Shown: one piece after another, positions 1,628 to 51,331 of the stretch
How positions within the stretch are numbered: the stretch's first letter is position 1
Layout: each line of letters opens with the position of its first letter
Assembly: GCA_965240325.2 (NCBI GenBank)
Contig: OZ251242.1
Span: 124,001 to 188,000 of the forward strand
Direction: 5' to 3'
DNA length: 64,000 nt
Source of the DNA: Rebecca billardiae RCC1528
Taxonomy: Eukaryota > Protista > Haptophyta
Notes under the pieces: model-generated
Told to the model about the DNA's origin: nothing
The model's input: the letters and a program-made list of their open reading frames with translations, nothing else
Databases searched by the model: none
Translations under genes and position numbers: made by a program

Positions 1628-2640
1628 GGCCGCGCGGCGGGCGCCTCCGAACGGACCGGACCGGCACGGCGCCTGATGTGCCACTTCAATTCGTAGGGAG
1701 GTGGCGGGCCAAGTCTTGATCTGTCGGTAAGCGCGACCGGCCGATGGCGATGGTATGTATTGGTGCTGGCAGAGTGCCGGTCGCCGCGGCCCGGGCGCGG
1801 ACGGCTCGCAGCCCCGCTCACGCTGCGCACTGCTGAGTGCTGACTCGACCGCCCAGCGGCGCCCACTCGCCCGAGGTGCTATACTCCTAGCAATATATTT
1901 ATTTAATTATAATATATATATATATATCAGCAGGTCGTTAACGGTCTAACTGATGAATAATATTAATAATATATATAACGAACGGGCGCAGCCTGGTCAC
2001 TCATCACGCGGTCTCACCGCTCACGCCCACGGGCACGGGCACGGGCGGTGCCGGTGGCGCCCAAGCCCCAACCAAAGGACCATCCAACCGAGCAACTCGC
2101 CCCGATGCAGTCTACTCCGAGTGAGTGCGAGTGACAGTGACTAGTGAGTAGTGACTAGTGTGCCAGTCTGAGTACTCGGCTCAGACGGAAATTTGAGTAC
2201 AGCTTACTATAGTTATAATATAGCTTAGCAGCTGTTAGCAGCAATGGTATAATATCTTACTGCTTTGCTGACGAACACCGTTACGACTAGGTGAACAACT
2301 GGTACAGATGCGGGGCGAAAACCGCGGCGCGACTGAATCGCCATTCGGCCGAATCGGCTGCGCGCGATCGGCGGCCGCGCCGCGGCCGGTGCACTCTGCA
2401 CTGCAACGCCGGTCACCGTTCGGAGCTGGTCAGGCCGCGGGCAGGGCACGGCTGCGGCCCTGCCCGCACCGCTCGGAGCCGCGGCCATACCCCCCACGGG
2501 GCATCGCCACGGGGCTGCGGGCGGTGCTGTCGCGGGCGCGGCTGCAGCCAGCGCGGCGCGAGCGGCCCGCAGGGGGCCACCCCGCGCTGCGCGCCGGCGC
2601 GCGCGCACACGGACGCTAGGGCGTGCGCGGCTCGGGCGGC

Positions 2641-9385: not shown

Positions 9386-10454
9386 TCAGGCCATGAGCTC
9401 GGCCACGCGCGGCTCCAGGCCCTGCCCCGGCGGGTACGCATCCTCGCCCCAGCGCGAGATCTCGATCTCGGCGCACACGCGCTGCAGCATGGCCGCCGAG
9501 AGCGCAGCGCACACGTGCCGCTGCCACGCGGCCCACTCGCGCTCGGAGCTGGCGACGGCGGCGAGCGCGTGCACGAACGCGCGCGCGTGCGTGTCGTGCG
9601 GGTGGTGCCGCTCCAGCTTGGCCAGCGCGTAACCGATGAAGAAGCCCATCTCGGACTCGGGCACCGCTGCGGCCCGCCGCGCGGCCGCCGCGCGCGCGCG
9701 CGTGCCAGCGTGGGAAGAATGAGGTGTGGCGTTGCGCGCGCGCGCGTGGCGGGGCCGACGGGCCGGAGCGACGCGGGCGCGCAGCAGCCGGCGTACCGCG
9801 CGCGCGAGCCCCGCCCCCGCCCGGCACCGCGCCGCGCCGCGCCGCCGCGCGCGCACCAGGCAAGATGTGCGCCTGCATCTCCTGGCGAAGCTCGACGCCG
9901 CGCGCCGGCAGCTGGCGCAGCGCCGGGCCTGCGAGCTTCTCCTCGAGGGCGAGGTGCTGCTCATCCTTGGCCTGGTACGCGTCCCACGCGGCGCGGAGCC
10001 TGGGCGCCGAGCGCGCGCGCACCGCGTCCGCCACCCGCCGCTCGAGCTTCTCCACCTGCGCATGCAGATTCCGGAAGCCGGACTTGGCGGCGAGGTCGTC
10101 GAATTGCACGTCCAGGATGGCCCACAGCCCGCCGGCGACGAGCTTGGCGCGCTTGTCGTGCACGCCGTCCTCCATGCGCGCGTGCAGCGCCTGGAAGCGC
10201 TTGTACGCCGACCACTCCGCCTCGAACGCGCCCATCGCCCCCGCGGCCTCCGGCGCCGCCGCCGCCGCGCCGCGCACGTCCGCAAACGCGCCCTCGGCCG
10301 CGGGCGGCAGCGCGTCGTGCAGGTCGGCGAGCGCGCCGCGCAGCACGGCGTGCGAGTGGCGCATGATGGCGAAGACGCTCGGGCGCAGCGGCGCGGCGGG
10401 TGGCGCCGGCGCCGGCGCCGGCGCCGGCACGCCACTCGCGCTCGACGCGCTCAT
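9386..10454 (-). CDS. Hemerythrin-like (HHE cation-binding) protein; exons 10454-9857 and 9666-9386
   Basis: Ligand pattern H (RHSHAVLR), HxxxE (LHARMED), H (NLHAQVE), HxxxE (QHLALEE) in helical context. GT..CAG intron 9856-9667 joins HILP|AVPESE. Confidence 0.72.
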
Positions 10455-11677: not shown

Positions 11678-12921
11678 CATGCTGGGTGGCTCGAGCGCCA
11701 CCGCCGCCGCCGCCACGTGCTGGCCCCAGCTGCGCCGGTCGGCGGCGGCGGAGTCGCGCGCGCGCTCGCTCGCGCGCCGCAGCGCCCAGCTGCCCAGCGC
11801 CGCGCGCCGCCGCGCCTCGGCCTCCGCGGCCGCGGCGGCGGCGCGCGCGCCGTCGGCGCGCGGCGGCGGCGCGCACAGTGCGGGCGCGCTCAGCACGGCG
11901 CGCTCGACGGCGGCCATCGTGTCCGCCGCGTCGGCGCGCGCCGCCTCCGCCTCCGCCGCCGCCTCGGCGCCGCCGCCGCCGCGCGGCGTCGGTGCGCGCC
12001 CGTCCGATCGCGCGCCGCCGTCGGCCGCCGCGCGCGCGGCCGCGCGCAGCAGCGCGCGCAGCGACGCGGCGCTGAGCAGCGTCTGCAGCGCGGCGCACGC
12101 GCACGCGCGGCCCGACGCGCCGCGCGCCGCCGCCGCGCACTCGCGCGCCGCGTACGCCGAGCCGTGCACGGCGGCGCGCGCGCGCGCGGCCGCGCCGAGC
12201 GCGCGCAGCTGCGCGCGCGCGCACAGCGCACCGCCGCCGCCGCCCGCCGCGCCCGCCGCGCCCGCCGCGCCCGTCTCGGCGGCGGCCGCGCGCGCGCACA
12301 GCGCGACGACCGTGTCCTCGGCCGCGCGCGCGCACTCGCAGAGCGCGCCCCAGTGCGCGCCCAGCTGCACCGCCGCCGCCGCCGGCGCGCGGCCGCGCCA
12401 GCCGCGCCCGCCGCCGCCGCCGTCCGCGCGCGCGCCGCCGCCGCCGCCGCCGCGCGCGGCCGTGCGCAGCAGCGGCAGCAGCACGCTCAGCGCCTCGGCC
12501 GCGTGCGCGAGCGCGCGCGGCGCGGCCTCGGGCGGGAGCGCGGCCGCGGCGGCGAGCAGCGCGCGCACCGTCGGCAGCAGCCCTCGCTGTCGCACGAGCG
12601 CCACCGCGCACTCGGAGTCCGCCGCCAGCGCCGCCACCGTCGCGACGAGGTGCGCGCGCGTGCGCAGCTCGGTGGCCACGCCGCCCGCGGCGTGCGCGGC
12701 GGCGGCGTGCGCGGCCGGCGGCGGCGAGCGGCGCGGCTCGGCCGTGGCGGCGGTGCCGGCGGCGCCCGCCGCGCCGCCGAGCGGCGAGACGAGCGCGTCG
12801 AGCAGCGCCTCGGCGGCGTGCCGCGCGAGAAAGACAGTGCGCAGCCCCGCGCCGTCCGCCCCCGCCTCCGCCCCCGCCGCCGCCTCCGCCGCCGCCCCCA
12901 CCTCCGCCGCCGCCTCCGCCT

Positions 12922-12964
<43 letters not shown>

Positions 12965-14571
12965 CGCGTCGCGCGCGCCCGCGCGCAGCACGCGCCGCGC
13001 GTACCACGCGCGCTGCGCGCCCGCGGCCGCGCCCTTGCCGTGGCACATGTGCAGGAAGAAGGGAAGCTCGCTCAGCTGCAGCCACGGCGCCAGCAGCAGC
13101 TGCCGGCACAGCGTCGGGTAGAGCGGGTGCGCCGGGCGGCAGAGCACGGTCGAGGCGGCCGCGGCGAGGGCGGCGTGCGGCCGCGGCAGGCGCTGCGCGG
13201 GCGGCGGGGCCACGATGGCGTTGGCCACGGCGCGCAGCAGCAGGCACAGCTGCTCGCGGCAGCGCACGTCGCGCGGCGCGTCGAGCAGCCGCGCGTGCGC
13301 GTAGCCCAGCGCGCTGTAAGCCGCCGCGCGCACGGGCGGCGCGCGCGCGCTCAGCGCGGCGAGGCACAGCGCGAGCCAGCCGCGCTCGGCGGCGGCGGTG
13401 ACGTCGTGCGCGCCGTCGGCGAGCAGGGCGCGCGCGCACAGCAGCAGGACACCCGCGTCGAGGCAGCGCGCGACCTCCTCCTCCGCCGCGCCGCCGGCGC
13501 CACCGCCGCCACCGTCACCGCCGCCCTCCTCGTCCCCGCCGCCGCCGGCGCCGCCGGCGCCGCCGCCGGCGCCGCGCCCGACGCCGCCGCCGAGGCATGC
13601 GGGCGTGTGCGCACTCTCCAGCCCCTCGGCCAGGGCGCACAGCGCGCGCGCGGGCAGCAGGCTGAGCGCGCAGCGCGGCGCGTCGCGCGTCCCGGCCGCG
13701 TCCGCGCCCGCGGCCGCGAGCCCGCCGCCGCCCGCCGCGGCGCTCGCCACCTCGAGGCCGCGCGCGACGACGGCGACGGTGCGGCGCGCGCGGCCGTGCG
13801 GCGGCAGTGCCGCTCCGATGCACGCGTCCAACTCGAGCGCAGCGCACGCCGCACCGTCGGCAGCGGCGTCGGGCGCGGGCGCGGCCCCGTCGGCGCGGCG
13901 CGCGCGCTTGCGCGCCGTGCCGCCATCGACGCCCGCCGCGACGGCCAAAGGCGCCGCCGCCGCCGCCGCCCAGATCGCCGAGGCGAGGCGGCGCGCGTGC
14001 GCGCGCGTGCGCGCGTGCGGCGCGCAGCACGCGGCGTGCACACTCGGCGCGTCCAGGGCGCGCGCCAGCCGCGCCCACGCAGGCTGCTCGGCGGCGGCGG
14101 CCGCGCGCGCCGCCGCGGCGGCCGCGCCGTCCGCCGCGTCGCAAGCGCACGCGCCGCCCGCCGCGCGCGCCAGCGCCACCGTCGCGCCGAGCAGCTCGCA
14201 CCGAGCGCGCTGCAGGCAGCGCGCGCGCGCTGCGCCGAGCGGCGCGCCGCCGCCGCGCGCCGCCGCCGCCTCCGCCGCGTCCGCGGCGGCGTCCGCGGCC
14301 GCCGCTTCGGCCGCGCCGTCCGCGCCCGCCGGCGGCGCCGCCAGCGCCGCCGGCAGCCCGGCCACCGCCGCCGCCGCCTCGGCGCTGCGCGCGCTCAGAG
14401 CGCACACCGCCGCCGCGTGCGGGTCGGCCGCCCAGCGCGCCGCGGTCGCCACCGCCCACTCCGCCAGCCGACGGCCGGGGGCGGGGCCGGCCGCGGGCGC
14501 GGCCGCGGCGCACGCGGCCGCGGCGAGGCGCACCAGGGGCGCCGCGGCTTGCAGCACGCCGCCGCCGCCGC

Positions 14572-14604
<33 letters not shown>

Positions 14605-17600
14605 CGCCGCCACCGCCCGCCGCCGGCGCGGCGGAGATGGCAACCTCGCCGCGCGCGGCGGCGGAGAGCGCGCGGCCGCCGATCGCGTCGACAGCGCGGC
14701 GCGCGCGCTCGGCGGCGCGCAGCAGCGCGCCGACGTCGCCGTCGCCGCCGTCCGCAGCGCCCGCGTCAGCGCGCGCCGAGGCTGCCGCGCTTTCCGCGGG
14801 CGGCAGCGGCGAGATTGCAATCTCCGCCGCTCGAGGCGGCAGCGGCGCGGCCGCCTCGAGCGCCGCCGCCACCGCCTCGGCGGCGCGCGCGCGCGCGGCG
14901 GCGCACGCGGCGGCGGCGCGCGCGGCCGAGCGCGCGCGCGCGCCGCCGCTCGCATCGGCGGCGCGCCGCGCCGCCGCCGCCACCGCCGCCTCGCCGCCGC
15001 CGCCGCCGCCGCCGCCACCGCCGCCGCCATCGTCGTCGTCCGAGCCGGCCGCCGCGCCCCCCGCGCCCTCCGCCACCGCCGCCGCGCCGCCGCGCCGCGG
15101 GGCGGGCGCGGCGGCCGCCGCCGCCGCCGCCGCCGACGCGCCGACGCCGACGGCCACCCAGCCGCCGAGCGCGCCGAGCGCGCCGAGCGCGCTCGCGTGC
15201 CACTCGCGCGCCCCGCCGGCCGCGCCCTCCGCCCCCGCCTCCGCCGCCGCCTCCATCGCCGCGCCCGCCGCGCGCGCGCTCGCCGCCAGCGCGTGCGCCA
15301 GCGCCGCGCACCGCGCCGCGTCCTCGACGTCGGCGGCGAGCGCGAGCGCCGCCGCGGGCGCGGCGACGGAGGCAGCGGCGCCGCCGCCGCGCGCGCCAGC
15401 CGCCGCGCCCTCCTCCGCGCCGCCGCCGCGCGCCACCGCTCGCTCGTGCGCGGCCGCGCGCGCGCGCAGCGCCGCCGCGGCCGCGCGCAGCCGCGCCGCG
15501 CGCAGCGGCCGCGCGCGCGCCAGCGTGAGCGCCAGGCTCAGCAGCGGCGGCGGGAGGCGCGCGCCGAGACGGCCATCTCCGCCGAGATTGCAATCTCCGC
15601 CGAGATTGCAATCTCCGCCGTGGGCGAGCGCGTCGAAGAGCTCGGAGCCGACGCACGCCCACAGCGCGGCGGCGGCCGCGGCGTGCACGTCAGCGCCACC
15701 GCCGCCGCCGCCGCCGCCGTCGTCGCCGCCGCCGCCGCCATCGCCGCCGTCAGCCCAGGGCGAGCACTCGCGCGCGGCGCGCACACACGGGCCAAGCGCG
15801 AGCGCGCGCGCGAGCTCGAGCGCGTCCGCGCCGGCGGCCGGCGCGGCCGCGCCGGCCGCCGGCGTAGACGCGCTGCCGTCGGCGTCGGCGCGCGCCTCGC
15901 GCGTGAGCACACGCAGCGCCGCCGCCCAGCGCGCCGCCGCGGCCGCGCTCGCCGCCGCCGCTTCGGCGGGCGAGCGCGCGGCCGCCGCGGCGTCGGCGGC
16001 GTCGGCGGCGGCGAGCGCGGCGCCGCCGTCGCCGTCCGCGCCGTGCGCCGTCGCGACGAGCCGCGAGACCGCCAGTGCGTGCGCCTCCGACGCCGCCGCG
16101 AGCGTGCGCAGCAGCGAGCGCCGCCGCCACAGCGCGGCGCCGTCGCGCGCCGCCGCCGCGTCCGCCGCCGCGTCCGCCGTCGCGCCGCGGCCCGCCCGCC
16201 CGCCCGCCGCCGCGCGCCGCCGCGCGCTGTGCTGCTGCTGCGGCCCCTTGGCGCGCGCCGAGATTGCAATCTCGGCGTGCGCCGAGATTGCAATCTCGGC
16301 GTGCGCCACGCAGAGCAGCCGCGCCCAGCGCCCGTCGCTCACGTGCGGCACCGCCGCCTCGCCGCCGCCGGCACGGCCGCCGCCGCCGCCGCGCCGCAGC
16401 AGCAGAGCGCTGAGTGCGCGCGTCAGCGGAGATTGCAATCTCGGCGCGCGCGGCGGCGGAGATTGCAATCTCGGCGCGCGCGGCATCGGCACAGCCGGCC
16501 GGCCGCGCGCCGCCGGCGGTGGCGCCGCCGACGCCTCCTCGAGGGCGAGCAGCCGCTCCAGCACGGCGTCCAGCGCGCCGCCCGCCGCGCCGGGGGCGGC
16601 CGACAGCGGCGCCGCGGCCGCGAGCGCGCCCACGCCCACGCCGCGCCGAGCTAGCAGCCGCAGCAACGGCGGCAGCAGGGACCACGGCTCAGGCGGCGGC
16701 GCGGCGTCGGCGTCGGCGCGGCGCAGCACGGCGCACGCGCGCTCGGCGCACGCGCTGCCGGCGAGGGCGGCGCCGAGCGCGGCCGCGTCCGAGCTGCGCA
16801 CGAGCGGCAGCAGCGCCGCCAGCAGCGCCACCGCGCACAGCGGCGCGCGCGCCCGCGCACACGCGTCTGCGCCTGCGTCTGCGCCTGCGTCTGCGGCAGC
16901 GTCTGCGCCTGCGCCTGCGTCTGCGGCGGCGGCGGCGGCGGCGTCTGCGGCAGCGGCCGTTGCCGCTGCGGCTGCTGCGCCGCCGGTGGGCGGCGGGGGC
17001 GCAGGCAGCCGCCGGGTCCACTCGGCCAGCGCGCGCGCCGCCGCGCGCGCGCACGGCGACGCACACGCGACCACCGCCGCCGCGAGCGCCGCCGGCGGCG
17101 GCGGCGGCAGCGCGCGCCGGGCGCTGCCGCGCCGAGCGGGCTGGCCGCTTCGCGCCGCGCCGCCGCACGCCTCGCAGAAATGGCGAAGCAGCGCGCGCGC
17201 GCCGCCCGCGCGGCCCTCCGCCGCGCCCTCGTCCTCGCTGCCGCTGCCGCCGCCCGCGTCCTCCTCCTCGCTCGAGAGGGCCAGCGCGGCCGCGGCGCCC
17301 AGCTGGAGGCGCGCGCAGGGCGGCGGCGCCGGCCGCGCGCCGGCCGCGCCGCCGACGCCGCCCGCCGCGGCGGCGGCGAGAACGTCGAGCACGGCGCACG
17401 CCGCCGCGTGGCCCACGCGCGCCTCGAGCGCGCCCTCCGCACCGCCCGCCGCGCCGCCGCCCTCGGCCGACACCGCCTCGAGCGCCAGGCGCCGCAGCGG
17501 CGCGCTGGCTCCGAGCAGTGCGCGCACGGCCGCGGAAGCGTCCTCGCCGCCGCCGACCGTGGGTGGCTCCGCCGCCGCCGCGCCGGGCGCGGGCGCGGCG

Positions 17601-38310: not shown

Positions 38311-39695
38311 ATGGATCTGCACGACCTGCGGGGCGTGGTGGAGGACGTGGTCACTCGCGCCCTCTCCCTCGTCCGCCCCTCCGCCCCGGAAGCCGCCGCG
38401 CCCGCCGCGCCGCCATCGTCCGAGCTCCCGGACGACGAGCACGTCGCGGCGCTGCTGCGGCGCGCGGAGAAGGTGATCGTGATGGTGGGCGCCGGGCTGT
38501 CGACGGCGGCGGGGATCCCGGACTTCCGCACGCCGGGCACGGGGCTGTACTACCAGCTCGAGAAGTACGAGCTGCCCAGCCCGCAGGCCATTTTCTCGAT
38601 CGATTATTTCCGCGCGCGGCCGGAGCCGTTCCACCTGCTGGCGCGCGAGATGTGGCCGGGCAACTTCGCGCCGACGGAGGCGCACGCGTTCCTCCGGCTG
38701 CTCGCGGAGAAGGGCAAGCTGCTCCGCGTGTACACGCAGAACATCGACGGCCTCGAGCGCCTCGCCGGCGTGCCGCCCGACCGGCTCGTCGAGTGCCACG
38801 GCACGTTTGCGAGCGCGCACTCGATTGGGCCCGAGCCGAAGCAGTTTGACATCGGCTGGTACAAGGCGCAGCTCGACGCGGGGAGCACGGAGATCCGCTG
38901 CCCCGACACCGGCGCGCTCGTCAAGCCGGTCCGCGCCCGCGCGCGCCGCACGCGCCCGCGGCCACGCGCCCGCCGCGCGCGTGCCGTGTGCGCGCGTGCG
39001 CGCCTCGCCGCACCCTCACCCAACCCTATACCCTAACCCTAACCCTAACCCTCACCCTCACCCAACCCTATACCCTATACCCTAACCCTAACCCTCACCC
39101 AACCCTATACCCTAACCCTAACCCCCCTAACCCTAACCACCGGTTGGGTGGTTGGCCTCAGGACATCGTCTTCTTCGGCGAGTCGCTGCCCGCGCACTTC
39201 GGCCCGAGCGTCGCGGCGGACTTCCCGCAGTGCGACCTGCTGCTCATCATCGGCACGAGCCTCACCGTGATGCCCTTCGCCGGACTCGTCTCCAGAGTCC
39301 GGGAGTCGGTGCCCAGAGTCCTGGTGAACATGACGATGGCGGGCGAGGGCCGGCTGCGGCTGCGAGGGCAGCAGGAGCAGGAGCCGGCGGCGGAGGAGGA
39401 GGAGGGGGCGGAGGGGGCGGGCGGTTTCGACCCGTTCGCCGCGGCGCTCGTCGAGGACCGACGCCCGCACAACGACGTCGCCCTGCTCGGCGACTGCCAG
39501 GCCAGCGCGCGCCGGCTCGCCGAGCTGGCTGGGTGGGGCCCTGAGCTGCGCGCGCTGGCAGCCAAGCAGGCGAAGGCGCACGGCGCGCGCGCGGCGGGCG
39601 GCGGGGCGCCCGCGGCGGCGGGCGGCGGCGCGGCGGCGGCCGCGTCGAGCGCGGATGCGCTCGCGGGCGCGATGAGCAGGCTGGGCGTCGAATGA
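38311..39695 (+). CDS. SIRT2: NAD-dependent deacylase, class I sirtuin (SIRT2/Hst2-like); exons 38311-38928 and 39162-39695
   Basis: GAGLSTAAGIPDFRTPGTGLY, YTQNIDGLE, catalytic CHG, VKP|DIVFFGE, IIGTSLTVMPFA, PRVLVN, GDC. GT..CAG intron 38929-39161. Confidence 0.9.
39012..39137 (+). repeat. Interstitial telomere-like (CCCTAA)n array with CCCTCA/CCCTATA variants in the sirtuin intron
   Basis: About 20 short units visible, ending 24 nt before the intron 3' end. Confidence 0.95.
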
Positions 39696-43518: not shown

Positions 43519-43773
43519 TCACTCGGCCTGCGTCGACGGGTTGGGGCAGTCGCGCCCGATGTGGCCGTACTGGCCGCAGCGGTAGCACTTGGGGCCAGCA
43601 TCCTTGTACGCGCACTCCGAGGCAATGTGGCCTGTCTCGCCGCAGTTGAAGCAGCGCTGGCCGCGCGGGGGCTTGCGCGCCGCGCGGCGGCCCTCGGCCT
43701 CGGCGCCCTCGGCCGGCGGCTCGGGGCAGTCGCGCGAGAGGTGGTCCGTGGCGCCGCAGTTCCAGCAGGGCTT

Positions 43774-43851
<78 letters not shown>

Positions 43852-44283
43852 AGCGGCGCGGTTCTGCGTGCGGGTGCGCGGCGCGCGGGCCTGGCCGGGG
43901 GCGGCGGTGCCACCCGCGCGCGGCTTGGAGAGCAGCCGCTCGAGGCTCTCCACCGAGTGGTACCCCGACGCGCGCCACGACTGGCCCTGGTCCGCGGACG
44001 CCTTGATCGAGCGCTCGCCGTACAGAACGTCGATGACGACGCCGGTGGCGGAGTTCATGAAGTAGAGCGAGGCGAGCTCGGTGTTGCCCGGCTGGCGCTC
44101 CTCCAGCCCGGCGTTCATCGCCACGGAGTAGATGAACGTCGGGTCCGTCAGCTGCGGGTCGGCGACCTGGTTGGGGCAGTCGCGCGACACGTGACCGACT
44201 TGGCCGCAGCCGTAGCACGTGGGCGCCTCATTGGCGCACTCGCGCGCGATGTGGCCCGTCTCGCCGCAGTTGTAGCACCGCAT
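43519..44283 (-). CDS. CCHC zinc-knuckle (CNBP/Gis2-like) protein: 2 knuckles, globular insert, poly-Gly, 3 knuckles
   Basis: Five CX2CX4HX4C motifs (CYNCGETGHIAREC, CYGCGQVGHVSRDC, CWNCGATDHLSRDC, CFNCGETGHIASEC, CYRCGQYGHIGRDC). Confidence 0.9.
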
Positions 44284-44759: not shown

Positions 44760-46052
44760 TCACGGGTCGTCGTGCCGCCGCACCGCCTCCAGCGCGCCCG
44801 CGAGGTCTGCCTCGCTGATCGCCTGCCCCTCGCCGCGCCGCAGCGCGCGCAGCGCCGCCTCGTTCACGAGCGCGGCGAGCTGCGCGCCCGAGAGCCCTCG
44901 CGTGCGCAGCGCGAGCGCGCGCATGTCGTACTCGGGCGGCGCGGGCAGCTGCGCGGCGTACAGCTTGAGGATCTTCTCGCGCGCGCGCGTGTTCGGCAGC
45001 CGCACGTGCACCACGCGGTCGAACCGCCCCGGCCGCGTCAGCGCGCGGTCGAGCGCCTCGTACCGGTTGGTGGCGGCGAGCACGAGCACGCGGCACCCCG
45101 CCGCGCCGCCCGCGCCGGCGCGCGGCGGCGCGGCGAGCGCGCCGTCCATGCACGCGAGCAGCTGCGTCAGCGTCGCGTCGTACTCGCGGTGCGACTGCCC
45201 CGCCAGCGCCGAGCCGCCGCGCGACGCGCCGAGCGCGTCGAGCTCGTCGAGGAAGACGATAGCAGGCGTGCGCGCGCGGCCGTCGCGCGCCTTTGCGAAG
45301 AGGTCGCGCACGGCGCGCGCGCCCTCGCCGATGTACGGTGCGTGGAATTCGGAGGCGGCGCGCGCGTAGAAGCGCACGCCCGCCTCCGCCGCGAGCGCGC
45401 GCGCGAGCAGCGTCTTCCCCGTGCCCGGAGGCCCCACCAGCAGAACGCCGCGCACCGGCCGCAGCCCGAGCGCGGCGTATTTCTCGGGACGAATCAGCAT
45501 GTCGACGACCTCGCGCAGCTCGCGCACGGCGTGCTCGAGGCCGGCGACGGTGGCGAAGCCGTCCGCCGCGGGCACCAGCGCGCCGCCCTCCCCGCCCGCC
45601 GCGTGCTGCCCCGCCGCCGCGCGCCGCGCTCGCAGCACCTCCCCCGCGCCCAGCGCGCCGAGCAGCACCGCCGGCAGCAGCCCGAGCAGCGCGGCCCAGA
45701 GCTGCGCGGCGGCGCCGCCGGCGCTGGGCGGCGGCGGCTCGGCGGAGACGCGCACCTTGCACGCGTGCAGCCGCTCCACCAGCGCGTGCGGCACCTCCGG
45801 CGGCGGCGCCACGCACTCGCGCCGCTCGCCGCCGACCGTGTACGACACGATGCCGTCGCGCCCAAACCTCGCGCTCACGTCGGAGCCGCGCGCGGACGCG
45901 GCGTCGAGCAGCTCGGAGAAGCTGGTGCGCCGCGCGGGCGGCGTGGGCGGGCGCAGGAAGGGCAGCCGCGCGCCGCGCCGCGCGTCCTCCTCCTCCGCCG
46001 CCGCCGCCGCCGCCGCGGCCGCCGCGAGCACAAGAAGCCGCGTCGTCGCCAT
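44760..46052 (-). CDS. FtsH-like membrane AAA+ ATPase lacking the M41 protease domain
   Basis: Hydrophobic leader, TSFSELL (FtsH_ext-like), TM helix, FATVAG, Walker A GPPGTGKT, Walker B IVFLDELD, SRH ATNR..LDRALTRPGRFDR, lid GLSGAQLAALVNEAAL, then stop. No HExGH. Confidence 0.85.
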   Translation of the reverse strand: MATTRLLVLAAAAAAAAAAEEEDARRGARLPFLRPPTPPARRTSFSELLDAASARGSDVSARFGRDGIVSYTVGGERRECVAPPPEVPHALVERLHACKVRVSAEPPPPSAGGAAAQLWAALLGLLPAVLLGALGAGEVLRARRAAAGQHAAGGEGGALVPAADGFATVAGLEHAVRELREVVDMLIRPEKYAALGLRPVRGVLLVGPPGTGKTLLARALAAEAGVRFYARAASEFHAPYIGEGARAVRDLFAKARDGRARTPAIVFLDELDALGASRGGSALAGQSHREYDATLTQLLACMDGALAAPPRAGAGGAAGCRVLVLAATNRYEALDRALTRPGRFDRVVHVRLPNTRAREKILKLYAAQLPAPPEYDMRALALRTRGLSGAQLAALVNEAALRALRRGEGQAISEADLAGALEAVRRHDDP

Positions 46053-46155
46053 CGTGCGACCGTTCCGCGGTGACTCGGTGAGGCCGCTCACGATCAGCAG
46101 GGCGGCGGGACGCGGGGCGTTGCTCGCGTGGAGCGGCAGCGCCCGCTGTGCGCGC

Positions 46156-47867: not shown

Positions 47868-47946
47868 GGCGCCGCAGCGGGCCGCGACGTCCGCGGCCGC
47901 ACGGGGGGGCGAGGCGGACGGGCCTTTGGAATTCAGCGTGCGATGA
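46156..47946 (+). CDS. Calmodulin-like protein with four EF-hands and long N- and C-terminal extensions
   Basis: EF loops DRDRSATISVTE, DASRDGAISFCE, DADGTGTISRSE, DTNGDGQIDYRE. CaM-like LGQNP linker. Confidence 0.85.
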
Positions 47947-48318
47947 CTCGGACGTCGGCCGCACGTCGACTGCGGCGGGCAAACTGATTACTGGCAGCTC
48001 GGCCGGGCACGGCCGCACAGGCTACGCGGCCCCGGGGCCCGCGCCGCCAACTGAGCGGCTAGCTGGCGCGCAGCATTTGCAGGGCGCCGCCGCCGCGCCG
48101 TCACGTCGAGTCACTTTATTTACGAGTACTGCTAGCTAGTCGGCACCGCGTAGTACAGTTTACTAAGAATAAGAGACGCACACAGCTCAGGCAGGCGAGA
48201 TACAACTCAGAGTAGTAATTAGTTCAAGTACTCCGATTCCGAAGTCGGAGTTCGGAGAGTACGAGTACCGCCGCCCGGGACCGGATGACGATGATGCCAC
48301 TACCCCGTACCCGGTGCG

Positions 48319-48730
48319 CCCGCCGCGCGCCGGCGCGGGCGGCGGGCGGCGCCGGGGTGCCGCGAATGCTCGTGGCCGCGTGCTCGCCGCCACCAACCGG
48401 TCCGGACGACGAGGCGCGCGCTCGACCGCGCGCTGACGCGGCCGGGGCGGTAGCCTAGTGCAGCGGACCGCGTGCTGCGGTGCACGTGCTGACGGCTGCC
48501 GAACTCACGCGTGACTCAGTACCCGCGGCGCGAGCCAACTCGCCGATTCTGACGGTGAATAAATCGTCACATCACTGAAGTAGAAGCGCTGTACCGAGTG
48601 CCGCGCAGCCGTGGGACCCGCACCGCCCGAGTACGACATGCGCACGCTCGCGCTGCGCACGCGAGGGCTCTCGGGCGGATCGGGCGCGCAGCTCGCCGCG
48701 CTGTCGTCGGAACGAGGCGGCGGCGGCTGC
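48319..48730 (+). pseudogene. Inverted, insertion-riddled partial duplicate of the FtsH-like AAA gene (source about 45128-44849)
   Basis: Exact shared blocks such as ctcgccgccaccaaccggt, ctcgaccgcgcgctgacgcggccggggcggt, ccgcccgagtacgacatgcgc and cgctcgcgctgcgcacgcgagggctctcgggcg occur in the same order, separated by short insertions. Confidence 0.92.
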
Positions 48731-48869
48731 TGATGAGCATGTCGAGTGACATCCAGCCAGCCCGCGGGCCCCGGCCGCTCGCGCGCGGCTCTGACACGGC
48801 GAAAAGTGATGGCGGCACTATGACGACGACCGCACCGGGGCCGGACGAGGCCGGCTTTATTGAATATAC

Positions 48870-51331
48870 TCACACAGCAGGCTGGCAAGAGTCCTGGGCA
48901 ATCGTGCTGGCCATGCCATCGTGATGAATAACGGGCGTGTCCTTGGAAATGCCAATGGCCAGCGCGGTAGACTCAGGCAGGCGGCGGCGGCAAGCAGCGA
49001 CCGGGACCAGCGCTGCGAGGACGAGCGCGGCGCCCAGTGCGCCGGCGACGAGCAGTGCCGCCGTACCCAGGGCGGCCTCGTCATCTGACGCCAGCGCGAG
49101 GAAGCGGGAAGAGGGCTTGGATGCGTGCACGCCGGCCGGACAGTCGTTCAGGAGGAGGCAAAGCACCCGCTTGGTGACAGAGGGCAGAGTGGCTGCCAGC
49201 TGCGCGCGCAGTCGGCCGCGTGGGCAGCGCGGCAGACAGACGTCGCGGTGAATGAGGTGGGCGGCGGCTGAGCGCGCACGCGCGGAGCGGCTGCAGGCGG
49301 CCCGCAGTCGGTCCGGCTCGTTGGGCGGGAGCAAGCACGAGCGCGTGTCTGAAGGGCACAGGCACGACCCTGGGTATCCCGCGCTAGCGGTGCACATGGG
49401 CGCGCGCACACGGCTGGGCGCGGCGCATGCGCGCACACCATGAAGAAGCACACGGGGCCACACGCAGCTGCCGGCGGTGGCGATGGCGGCGGTGGCGGCG
49501 GCAATGGCGGCGGCGGCGGTGGCGGAGCCGGTGGCGGCGGCGATGGCGGCGGCGATGGCGGCGGCGATGACGGTGGTGGTGATGGCGATGGCGGTGGTGG
49601 TGGCGATGGCGGCGGTGACGTATCCGGCGGCGGCGGCGATGGCGGCGGCGATGGTTGTGGTGATGGTGGTGGTGGCGATGGCGGCGGCGATGGTTGTGGG
49701 GACGGCGGTGGCGATGGCGGCGGTGATGGCGGCGGCGGCGGTGGCGGGGCTGGCGGCGGTGGCGACGGTGGCGGAGCCGGCGAGGTGACATATCGGACAA
49801 AATCGTCATTGTCCGCGTCGACGTAGTCATTGGGGTCGGCGTAGATCTTGTCGTATTGGCCATCGGCCGCGTAGATCTTGTCGTACTCACCATCGGCCGC
49901 CTTCACCGTGGTGAAGTATCCGCTTGAGACGTGCCCCTCGCCAGTTGCAAAGAATGTGTCATAGCCAGCGCCCCCTGCGGCCGGGGGTGGGCAGGCGCAG
50001 GCGCGGGCGCGCGCGCACCGGGGCTTAGAGCGATAGCAGCACGCAGCGCACATGCATGCGCGCGGCGCATCCATCAATCACGGCAGCATCCACTTCTTCA
50101 CCACCAGCGCATGCTGCGTGCGCTTACCTGTAAGGACGTTTATGGAGTACTTCCCTGCATTGAGCAACTGAAAGACGTCGTCCCCGTTTCCGCCTGTGCA
50201 GGGCGCGGGGCGTGCGGATGGCAGGCGCGAAGGCTCGGATGAGCAAGCTGCAGCAGTAGCCGTGCGCGGCGCTGCCCCGGGCTCGACGCTGACAGACTGC
50301 ATGAGCCAGGCACTGGGCAGGCCGATCGACCAATCATCATCAAAGGCCACGCGGGCACGCGCGCGCACCGTAGAAATTGTTGTACGTCTTGCCATCACCC
50401 CCTGAGTTCGCCACAAGGTAGTCGCCGCCATCCTGCCCGTAGAAATTGTTGTAGGCAATACCTCCGAGAGACCCAGATGCGCCGACACCTCCATAAAATT
50501 TGTCGTCACCTGCAGCGCCCTGCAAGTGCACGCGCCGCGCGTGTGTGCACGTGTGCGCAGCGCGCGCGCGAGGGAGACGGCAACAGCACAGGATCGGCCG
50601 TGTGCGCAGCCAGGGAACGCCGGAACGGGCGTGCGCCGATGGCAAGCGGGTGCGTGTGTGTGCTGCCGGCGGGCAGGGACGCGGCTGTCAGCCAGTCCGC
50701 GTGGACTGAGTAGCACCCCATGGCATGGCGTGGGTGCGGCGCGTGCCAGTCTGAGTCTCCGACTGCGCGCAGGGGTAAAGACAGCGCCGCAGGGAGTGGC
50801 TGCGTCTCACGCACATAGACGTTGTTCACGGCGTTACCACCGCGATTAGAACCGCTATAGTCTCCGCCGTTGCCTCCGGTGAAGACGTCGTCGCTAGATT
50901 TCCCGGCGTAAGTGTTCACGTAAGAGTCGCCGCTCTTGCCGCTGGTGGCGTCCGCGCCGTCCTTGCCCGTCCAGATGAGAAGTGCGCGGCCGCGGCTGCG
51001 CAGCGCATGCAAGGCGAGGACCCGCGGGCGTAGCACCACCGGGGGGCTCATGCTGAGTGAAGCGGGCCCGTGTGGCGTGAGCTGGCCGCGTAGCGTGGCG
51101 TGAGCTGGCCGCGTCATAGGCGTAGCATGCGCCTGCTGCGCATCGCAGGGCGACGGCTCGGCGCAGCGCGTACTCGTGGTACCACGTGCTCAGTGCAGCC
51201 ACCCCCGTGGGGCTTGTCGGGCGGGGATGCCCCGCATGGCCTGGAGACGTCGCGGCGCGCTCGGCGATCGCGAGCGGCAGCATGCCACTCGCGAGGAGGA
51301 AGAGCGCGTGCCGCACGGCGCCGAGCCGCAT
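48870..51331 (-). CDS. Cell-surface protein: signal peptide, RTX/hemolysin-type Ca2+-binding GGxGxD repeats, Ser-Pro extensin-like stalk, C-terminal TM; exons include ?-50815, 50519-50369, 50193-50128, 49974-49439, 49199-48870 (first intron unresolved)
   Basis: Spliced product contains GKDGAD, GKSSDDVFT, GGNGGDYS, GAAGDDKFY, GQDGGDYLV, GGNGDDVFQ, GGAGYDTFF, then (SPPP)n, then a hydrophobic helix followed by RRR. Four GT..CAG introns restore the frame. Confidence 0.72.
49470..49790 (-). repeat. Coding (Ser-Pro-Pro-Pro)n extensin-like repeat
   Basis: Tandem GGCGGCGGCGAT-type units on the + strand. Confidence 0.9.

What the first reader, a model, noticed from the sequence alone, without database searches (positions are those of the whole stretch)
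48319..48730. Gene fragment decayed almost purely by dense short insertions: candidate insertion-peppering mutational or anti-duplicate system
Seen: this segment is an inverted copy of about 280 bp of the neighbouring AAA gene (45128-44849) that has grown to about 410 bp. My manual alignment gives roughly 20 insertions, mostly 2-12 nt plus one ~50-nt AT-rich block. I see no clear deletions and only about two substitutions, both CpG G>A. Several inserts copy adjacent sequence (gccgcgtg; gatcgggcg after tcgggcg; ccggacg after ccggt). Established: ordinary pseudogene decay is dominated by substitutions and deletions, and templated short insertions are a hallmark of Pol-theta/PolX end-joining. Inference: this genome has a strongly insertion-biased process acting on unconstrained or duplicated DNA, possibly functionally analogous to RIP but working through indels.
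Basis: partly seen in the sequence, partly recalled or inferred. Interest (0 to 1): 0.82.

Follow-up and report, generated by a model that had tools for sequence, protein, structure and literature searches.

The report
Insertion-riddled dead copy of gene fragment
A 276-base piece of a neighbouring AAA-ATPase gene sits upside-down 3.2 kb away, swollen to 403 bases by about 20 short insertions with almost no other change. This is real in the assembly and unusual, but it does not show a genome defence against duplicates.

Summary
Window 48320-48722 (+) is an inverted copy of 45128-44853, the 3' part of an intact FtsH-like AAA gene of a pavlovophyte alga.

- **Differences between the two.** There are 18 merged (27 raw) insertions totalling 127 nt, and two substitutions, both G>A at CpG. 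No unambiguous deletion lies inside the core.
- **Polarity.** The gene version aligns without gaps to orthologues in the copied stretch, so the extra bases are true insertions.
- **Templating.** Only about 3 of 18 inserts are clear local duplications (junction test p=0.004, carried by those three). The rest, including a 53-nt AT-rich block, have no source in the window.
- **RIP-like reading.** It is not supported. The parent copy is untouched, and unique intergenic DNA also carries an excess of "repeat + short spacer + repeat" micro-duplications, five of them just left of the fragment.
- **My best reading (0.4).** The fragment is a dead duplicate made or scarred in one or a few clustered break-repair episodes by an insertion-prone end-joining polymerase.
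- **Main rival (0.3).** A steady genome-wide insertion-biased decay. Fourteen unverified first-reader notes from other pieces of this genome point that way.
- **Limits.** No sequencing run was listed and two metagenome scans were blank, so an assembly artefact (about 0.07) could not be excluded by reads.

The parts
48320..48722 (+). Inverted, non-coding copy of the AAA gene segment. It has 403 nt against 276 nt in the parent, with stop codons in all three frames.
   Evidence: Alignment and block list; translation; BLAST E=4.5e-32 for the left half.
44853..45128 (-). Parent segment inside the AAA gene. It encodes ...RVLVLAATNRYEALDRALTRPGRFDR...GAQLAALVNEAA (end of the AAA domain plus the lid).
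   Evidence: It aligns without gaps to Diacronema and Pavlovales orthologues from the conserved RVLV motif to the end of the copied stretch.
44763..46055 (-). Intact FtsH-like AAA ATPase gene without a peptidase domain (431 aa, single ORF).
   Evidence: Pfam AAA 2.6e-34 and AAA_lid_3 2.8e-10. Best relatives are Diacronema lutheri (57%) and Pavlovales sp. CCMP2436 (68%).
48535..48587 (+). A 53-nt, 47% GC block standing in place of 11 gene bases. It holds one of only ten AATAAA/TTTATT hexamers in the window (48558).
   Evidence: No source was found anywhere in the window.
48671..48679 (+). The clearest 'duplication plus filler' insert: TCGGGCG-GA-TCGGGCG.
   Evidence: shiftability 7.
48622..48644 (+). 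Interval bounded by the only two substitutions (48622 and 48644). Both are gene G to copy A within CpG.
   Evidence: Codon context comes: one change is synonymous GCG/GCA, the other Ala to Thr against a residue kept as Ala in two of three orthologues.
48232..48312 (+). Run of five back-to-back micro-duplications in the unique left flank: TCCGAtTCCGA, TCGGAGtTCGGAG, GAGTACGAGTAC, GATGAcGATGA and TACCCcgTACCC. It ends 8 nt before the copy.
   Evidence: The flank 47950-48319 holds 7 such repeats against 1.8 expected.
47947..48869 (.). A 923-nt spacer between convergent 3' ends. On the left is the plus-strand ORF with EF-hand domains, ending at 47946. On the right is an unnamed minus-strand ORF ending at 48870. 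The copy fills 44% of the spacer.
   Evidence: ORF list; Pfam EF-hand hits; sequence reading; spacer length.

Best explanation
The segment is a young, dead, inverted partial duplicate of the neighbouring AAA gene, lodged in the spacer between two convergent genes.

I read its extra 127 bases as the product of an insertion-prone DNA-synthesis step of break repair. The likely enzyme is an end-joining polymerase with terminal-transferase and primer-realignment behaviour, Pol-theta-like or PolX-like. I think it acted in one or a few clustered episodes.

In this scheme a break in the spacer was patched by copying the gene 3.2 kb away in fold-back or template-switch orientation. The nascent strand stayed annealed while its 3' end was repeatedly extended without template, or after slipping back. 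That yields collinear perfect blocks of 1-34 nt separated by short inserts, with no net loss of template. Later events at the same break-prone spot may have added more inserts.

**Shown:** the copy, its polarity, its indel and substitution spectrum, its position, and the lack of coding capacity.

**Inferred:** the enzyme class and the single or clustered timing.
For: - **Sequence pattern.** Collinear exact blocks are interrupted by 18-27 inserts, with no internal deletion and only 2 substitutions in 276 nt.
- **Rate argument.** Non-CpG divergence is 0 of about 146 sites, while insertion events are 6.5-10% per site. That ratio is hard to reach by ordinary gradual decay.
- **Geometry.** The arrangement is inverted and close by (3.2 kb), as expected for fold-back or template-switch repair.
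- **Nature of the inserts.** Most are untemplated. A minority are slip-back duplications with filler.
- **Neighbouring stutter run.** A run of five stutter-like micro-duplications ends 8 nt from the copy.
- **General intergenic DNA.** Imperfect micro-duplications there are at least as frequent as perfect ones. This argues weakly against a general regime in which insertions outrun substitutions tenfold.
- **A relative's repeats.** Repeat pairs in Pavlovales sp. CCMP2436 show ordinary substitution loads, 34-38 mismatches against 14-27 indel events.
- **Assembly quality.** The neighbouring ORFs are intact, so the assembly is not indel-noisy.
Against: - I know of no documented filler or template-switch product with about 19 collinear blocks from a single template and an insert every 11-15 nt. 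Known polymerases are far less insertion-prone per base.
- Junction microhomology at the two ends of the copy is not demonstrable.
- Both substitutions are CpG transitions, which suggests some elapsed time.
- Fourteen first-reader notes on other pieces of this genome report micro-insertion-dominated differences between repeat copies. If true, this favours an ongoing genome-wide process.
- Clusters of micro-duplications also occur in spacers with no gene fragment, for example 2000-2170.
Confidence: 0.4

Rival explanations
1. Steady, genome-wide insertion-biased decay. In this alga, short insertions (micro-duplications plus untemplated filler) arise in all unconstrained DNA far more often than substitutions or deletions. 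The fragment is simply a young neutral sequence that recorded about 20 independent events, while selection kept the gene clean.
For: - Low-GC non-coding DNA of the window has 86 observed against 34 expected 5-mer repeats at spacers of 0-5 nt, falling to baseline at spacers of 20-30 nt.
- Many clean 'X + filler + X' examples occur in several spacers.
- The scarcity of deletions is expected if the copy is very young.
- Fourteen unverified notes from other windows of the same genome describe the same signature between repeat copies.
Against: - It requires an insertion-to-substitution ratio of about 10:1, roughly 100-fold above known genomes. Small spacers of about 0.5-1 kb would then need compensating large deletions.
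- Only about 3 of 18 inserts in the fragment are of the duplication type that marks the intergenic signature.
- In unique intergenic DNA, imperfect micro-duplications are at least as common as perfect ones.
- A comparable, weaker short-spacer repeat excess is present in two other Pavlovales. In one of them repeat pairs carry many substitutions.
- Only one polarisable pair exists in this window.
Confidence: 0.3
2. Assembly artefact. A noisy long-read piece or mis-join was built into the consensus, and the inserts are sequencing errors.
For: - Insertions far above deletions, and deletions above mismatches, qualitatively recalls raw PacBio CLR error.
- No reads could be consulted.
- No independent contig carries the sequence.
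Against: - Mean insert size is about 4.7 nt, with inserts of 8-18 nt and a 53-nt block, separated by perfect blocks of up to 34 nt. This is unlike random 1-2-nt read error.
- The copy is not part of a fold-back palindrome. 3.2 kb of unique, gene-bearing sequence separates the arms, and normal sequence continues on both sides.
- Adjacent ORFs are free of frameshifts.
Confidence: 0.07
3. Duplicate-targeted genome defence that works through indels (functionally RIP-like). Repeated DNA is recognised and peppered with insertions.
For: The affected sequence is a duplicate, and the damage is dense and confined to about 403 nt.
Against: - The other member of the pair is completely untouched, although RIP-type systems mutate both copies.
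- Unique flanking and other intergenic DNA also carries micro-insertion signatures.
- There is no second example in the window.
- No candidate machinery could be examined.
Confidence: 0.05
4. Functional element shaped by selection. One possibility is a bulged antisense or decoy segment against the AAA mRNA, carried in the read-through transcript of the minus-strand neighbour. Another is a spacer element supplying a poly(A) signal.
For: - The copy lies just beyond the 3' end of a minus-strand ORF, and a minus-strand transcript through it would be antisense to the AAA mRNA.
- The AT-rich block holds a rare AATAAA.
Against: - There is no Rfam match.
- The fold is no better than shuffles, z=-1.3.
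- Selection cannot by itself create an insertion-only spectrum.
- No expression data could be obtained.
Confidence: 0.03

Closest known systems
Filler DNA / patchwork insertions at repaired double-strand breaks (SDSA-like template switching in plants; Pol-theta-mediated end joining)
   Same: A stretch copied from a nearby template, here in inverted orientation, sits in non-coding DNA. Templated runs are interrupted by short untemplated or slip-back additions.
   Different: From my own knowledge, known fillers have a few patches, often scrambled in order and strand and usually with flanking deletions. Here about 19 blocks are strictly collinear from one template, and the template shows no loss. 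Most inserts are not demonstrably templated.
Replicative template-switch rearrangements (FoSTeS / MMBIR) and error-prone break-induced replication
   Same: Both give a nearby inverted duplication of a few hundred bases with small mutations clustered in the newly synthesised tract.
   Different: Reported error densities are orders of magnitude lower than one insert per 11-15 nt (my own knowledge). Junction microhomology was not demonstrable here.
Tandem micro-duplications from staggered nicks or unprocessed flaps (patch-mediated repair in plants; rad27/FEN1-type duplications, cf. PMC13493898; HELQ-dependent tandem duplications, PMC8654963)
   Same: The outcomes are insertion-only and of the form X(+filler)X. 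They are seen in the left flank, in other spacers, and in about 3 inserts of the copy.
   Different: This does not explain the majority of inserts, which are not duplications, nor the 53-nt block.
Repeat-induced point mutation (RIP) and related duplicate-silencing systems
   Same: Both involve dense damage confined to a duplicated stretch.
   Different: RIP gives C-to-T transitions in both copies. Here the changes are insertions, only one copy is hit, and unique DNA shows related marks.
Cut-and-paste transposon excision footprints (target-site duplication plus a few end or P-nucleotides)
   Same: Each gives a net short insertion of the form duplication + spacer.
   Different: There is no constant duplication length. 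Sizes run from 1 to 18 nt and most inserts lack any duplication.

Membership tests
RIP-like duplicate-targeted mutagenesis | Both copies of the duplication are mutated | tested here: not met
   The parent gene segment is an intact ORF and aligns without gaps to orthologues in the copied stretch. All changes are in the copy.
RIP-like duplicate-targeted mutagenesis | The signature is confined to repeated DNA and absent from single-copy DNA | tested here: not met
   Unique low-GC DNA shows a 2.5-fold excess of short-spacer direct repeats. The unique left flank has 7 against 1.8 expected.
Pol-theta-mediated end joining (templated insertions) | Inserts are copied from sequence within tens of bases of the junction, on either strand | tested here: inconclusive
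   Longest common substring with the +-20-nt flanks gives p=0.05 direct and p=0.07 inverted. K-mer reuse within 1 kb is not significant. Long inserts have no source in the window.
Pol-theta-mediated end joining (templated insertions) | Microhomology or duplication at insertion junctions | tested here: inconclusive
   Total shiftability is 24 against 12.8+-3.6 (p=0.004), but 15 of the 24 come from 3 of 18 events.
Pol-theta-mediated end joining (templated insertions) | Insertions usually accompanied by deletion of flanking bases | tested here: not met
   There is no unambiguous deletion inside the core. At most three events could be small replacements.
Filler DNA / template-switch duplication | Donor template lies nearby on the same chromosome | tested here: met
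   The donor is 3.2 kb away in inverted orientation.
Filler DNA / template-switch duplication | Microhomology at the outer junctions of the inserted tract | tested here: inconclusive
   The ends are ambiguous within GC-rich low-complexity sequence (CGC / GCG). Extension beyond the ends is not above controls.
Processed (retro)pseudogene | Reaches the mRNA 3' end with a poly(A) tract and target-site duplication | tested here: not met
   The copy stops 91 nt before the stop codon. No poly(A) tract and no flanking direct repeat are present.
Transposon excision footprints | Duplication of a fixed, family-specific length around a short filler | tested here: not met
   Insert sizes run from 1 to 18 nt (a 53-nt block after merging), and the duplicated part is 0-7 nt.
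Long-read assembly error | Reads disagree with the consensus at the site | not testable with these tools
   No run was listed for 47900-49100 or for the AAA gene. Two metagenome scans were blank.
Long-read assembly error | Indel noise also present in neighbouring sequence | tested here: not met
   The AAA ORF (431 aa) and the ORF holding the EF-hand domains are open, and the AAA protein aligns to its orthologues over the whole shared region.

The most novel reading that the evidence does not exclude
This pavlovophyte runs a genome-wide mutational regime in which short, mostly untemplated insertions outnumber substitutions about tenfold and swamp deletions in unconstrained DNA. That would reverse the near-universal deletion bias, and much of its intergenic DNA would literally be written by repair-polymerase additions. 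The AAA fragment would be the first polarised read-out of that process.
Probability: 0.27. Interest if true: 0.85.

Novelty: new variant of a known kind. Interest (0 to 1): 0.55.

Why it matters
Small-indel spectra are deletion-biased in essentially every genome studied, and that bias underlies models of genome-size evolution. A natural sequence with a known ancestral state that gained about 20 insertions while taking 2 substitutions and no clear deletion points to one of two things. Either it is a rare fossil of an extraordinarily insertion-prone repair synthesis, or it is the first sign of an insertion-dominated neutral regime in a very GC-rich alga.

Both readings can be tested directly with reads, sister strains and a genome-wide polarised comparison. 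The finding does not support a new genome-defence system.

Tried and rejected
- **Longer homology.** Extending the homology beyond 48320-48722 did not beat shuffles or natural controls.
- **Source of the long inserts.** No exact match of 11 nt or more exists in the window apart from the gene blocks and chance GC-rich hits.
- **Other duplicate pairs in the window.** Self-BLAST and a seed-chaining scan found only coding or tandem arrays, so no second polarised case was available.
- **Read support.** Two run searches listed nothing, so read laying was never used.
- **Independent contigs.** Two metagenome pattern scans were blank (one search failed because the machine was busy).
- **Structured or known RNA.** No Rfam family matched and the fold was no better than shuffles.
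- **Insertion-biased gene conversion as the sole cause.** I rejected this by argument. A drive strong enough to fix about 20 insertions should also have fixed AT-to-GC changes at the 58 AT sites, and none is seen.
- **Missed-adapter or fold-back read artefact.** I rejected this because the arms are separated by 3.2 kb of unique genic DNA.
- **Retrocopy.** Rejected: there is no poly(A) tract and the copy is an internal fragment.
- **Single-family transposon footprints.** Rejected: there is no constant duplication length.
- **Comparator loci.** Diacronema lutheri and Pavlovales sp. CCMP2436 showed a weaker version of the short-spacer repeat excess. That statistic is therefore not specific to this genome.
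- **Literature.** My searches found no report of an insertion-dominated spectrum in Pavlovales or other haptophytes.

Full report
**What is there.** The window is very GC-rich, 64-87% in 2-kb bins. It comes from a pavlovophyte haptophyte. The best relatives of the protein encoded on the minus strand at 44763-46055 are Diacronema lutheri (57% identity) and Pavlovales sp. CCMP2436 (68%). That protein is an FtsH-like AAA ATPase without a peptidase domain, with Pfam AAA at 2.6e-34 and AAA_lid_3 at 2.8e-10.

The finding's segment, 48320-48722 on the plus strand, is an inverted copy of 45128-44853, the last third of that gene. Self-BLAST scores the left half alone at E=4.5e-32. Homology does not extend significantly past either end.

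**Checking the numbers.** I aligned the two under four scoring schemes.
- Matches were 280-286 and mismatches 2-10.
- Insertion events in the copy numbered 19-27 and totalled 127-129 nt.
- Small deletions numbered 2-3, and the block-by-block listing places them all at the ambiguous ends.
- Merging inserts separated by 2 or fewer matched bases gives 18 events of 1-53 nt.
- The two clean substitutions, at 48622 and 48644, are both G to A within CpG. The parent segment holds 65 CpGs.
- The copy has stop codons in all three frames.
- The gene version aligns to three orthologues without gaps across the conserved part of the copied stretch. It is therefore the ancestral state, and the extra bases are true insertions.

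Three merged events may be replacements rather than pure insertions, notably the 53-nt, 47% GC block that stands in place of 11 gene bases. The idea that inserts copy their neighbours holds for only a minority of them.

**Are the inserts templated?**
- No insert of 12 nt or more has a source anywhere in the 64-kb window.
- Similarity of the inserts to their +-20-nt flanks is marginal, p=0.05 direct and p=0.07 inverted.
- Reuse of 6-8-mers within 1 kb is not significant.
- Junction 'shiftability', meaning duplication or microhomology at the insert edge, totals 24 against 12.8+-3.6 (p=0.004). Fifteen of the 24 come from three events: CGTGGCCG, GCGC and TCGGGCGGA.

About one sixth of the events are therefore slip-back duplications, one of them with a 2-nt filler. 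The rest look untemplated. They are 65% GC against 78% in the matched blocks.

**Context.** The copy fills 44% of a 923-nt spacer between two convergent 3' ends. One is the plus-strand ORF holding EF-hand domains, which ends at 47946. The other is an unnamed minus-strand ORF ending at 48870. No known RNA family matches, and the fold is no better than shuffles.

The unique left flank holds five back-to-back micro-duplications at 48232-48312. They are TCCGAtTCCGA, TCGGAGtTCGGAG, GAGTACGAGTAC, GATGAcGATGA and TACCCcgTACCC, and the run ends 8 nt before the copy. The flank as a whole has 7 such repeats against 1.8 expected.

Across 7 kb of low-GC non-coding DNA in the window, 5-mers repeated after a spacer of 0-5 nt number 86 against 34 expected. 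The count returns to expectation at spacers of 20-30 nt. Clean 'X + filler + X' examples occur in several spacers. Unconstrained single-copy DNA here therefore also bears an insertion-type signature.

**Is that signature special, and is it fast?** Intergenic DNA around the orthologous gene shows the same kind of excess more weakly in two relatives. It is 1.6-fold in Diacronema lutheri and 1.9-fold in Pavlovales sp. CCMP2436, against 2.5-fold here. Two dispersed repeat pairs in the CCMP2436 locus differ by 38 and 34 mismatches against 14 and 27 indel events. These pairs are rich in indels, but the indels fall in both copies and substitutions are plentiful.

In this window's own intergenic DNA, micro-duplications of 8-9 nt with one mismatch are at least as common above expectation as perfect ones. 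For 8-nt units the excess is 10.1 against 5.3. For 9-nt units it is about 6 against 2.8, with most mismatches internal. The numbers are small, and some copies may be born imperfect. Still, this is not what a steady regime with insertions tenfold above substitutions would leave.

**Weighing the explanations.** The RIP-like reading fails on two tested points. The parent copy is untouched, and single-copy DNA also carries insertion-type marks.

An assembly artefact is unlikely for three reasons.
- Inserts average 4.7 nt and reach 18 nt (53 nt after merging), between perfect blocks of up to 34 nt.
- The arms are separated by 3.2 kb of unique genic sequence.
- Neighbouring ORFs carry no frameshifts.

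It could not be excluded with reads, however. No run was listed and two metagenome scans were blank.

Two serious readings remain. In the first, the copy was born, or soon after scarred, in one or a few clustered break-repair episodes. An insertion-prone end-joining polymerase would have kept the nascent strand annealed to the gene while adding bases at its 3' end. This accounts for strict collinearity, the lack of template loss, the near absence of substitutions, the inverted nearby donor and the adjoining stutter run. It has no precedent at this density.

In the second, this genome continuously adds short insertions to all unconstrained DNA at a rate far above substitution. This accounts for the intergenic signature and for fourteen unverified first-reader notes of micro-insertion-dominated repeat divergence on other pieces of the genome. 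It requires an unprecedented rate ratio and sits poorly.

I put the first at 0.40 and the second at 0.30. Artefact gets 0.07, duplicate-targeted defence 0.05 and a selected functional element 0.03. The remainder is unassigned.

**Novelty and value.** In kind this belongs with filler DNA, template-switch duplications and end-joining insertions. In degree it is an extreme and unusually clean example, because the ancestral state is known base by base. I rate it a new variant of a known kind. The step that decides between a one-off fossil and a genome-wide regime is a polarised genome-wide count and read confirmation. Neither was possible with this window alone.

Noticed in passing
window 48115, 48558, 48856 (also 1898, 40291, 41129, 42622, 51657, 59570, 63504): AATAAA/TTTATT hexamers are rare, ten in 64 kb, and three lie in this one convergent spacer. 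One of them is inside the AT-rich insert of the fragment, and one is 9 nt past the stop of the minus-strand ORF. They may mark poly(A) sites. The AAA gene has none near its stop.
   Followed up: partly
window 2000-2250: An intergenic stretch is packed with stutter-like micro-duplications: CTCACcgCTCAC, CACGGGCACGGGCACGG, CGGTGcCGGTG, a degenerate CGAGTGA/TAGTGA array and TTAGCAGCtgTTAGCAGC. It resembles the run left of the fragment, but no gene fragment is nearby.
   Followed up: partly
window 39011-39138: A degenerate telomere-like array has CCCTAA units mixed with CCCTCA, CCCAA and CCCTATA variants. An earlier first-reader note places it inside an intron. The units differ by 1-2-nt indels as well as substitutions.
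   Followed up: no
window 43539-44283: Four diverged copies of a 48-55-nt unit (GGGCAGTCGCGC...GGCCGCAGC..GTAGCAC) lie next to a long GCC tract. From the pattern alone this looks like a repeated cysteine-rich (zinc-knuckle-like) coding unit on the minus strand. I did not verify it.
   Followed up: no
window 49440-49790 and 49800-49960: The minus-strand neighbour carries a 350-nt GGC/GAT-type coding repeat, followed by a 30-nt unit repeated 2.1 times. I read that unit by eye as ...DGEYDKIYAADGQYDKIYADP... No Pfam family matched any ORF here.
   Followed up: partly
L002 (Pavlovales sp. CCMP2436) 2162-2492 vs 13107-13431 and 12485-12834 vs 15588-15960: Two dispersed non-coding repeat pairs in a relative differ by 38 and 34 mismatches and by 14 and 27 indel events. 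That is an indel-to-substitution ratio of 0.4-0.8, high by usual standards but with gaps in both copies.
   Followed up: partly
L001 (Diacronema lutheri) 1-384 vs 9584-9967: A 384-nt exact direct repeat lies 9.6 kb apart, flanking the region upstream of the orthologous AAA gene.
   Followed up: no
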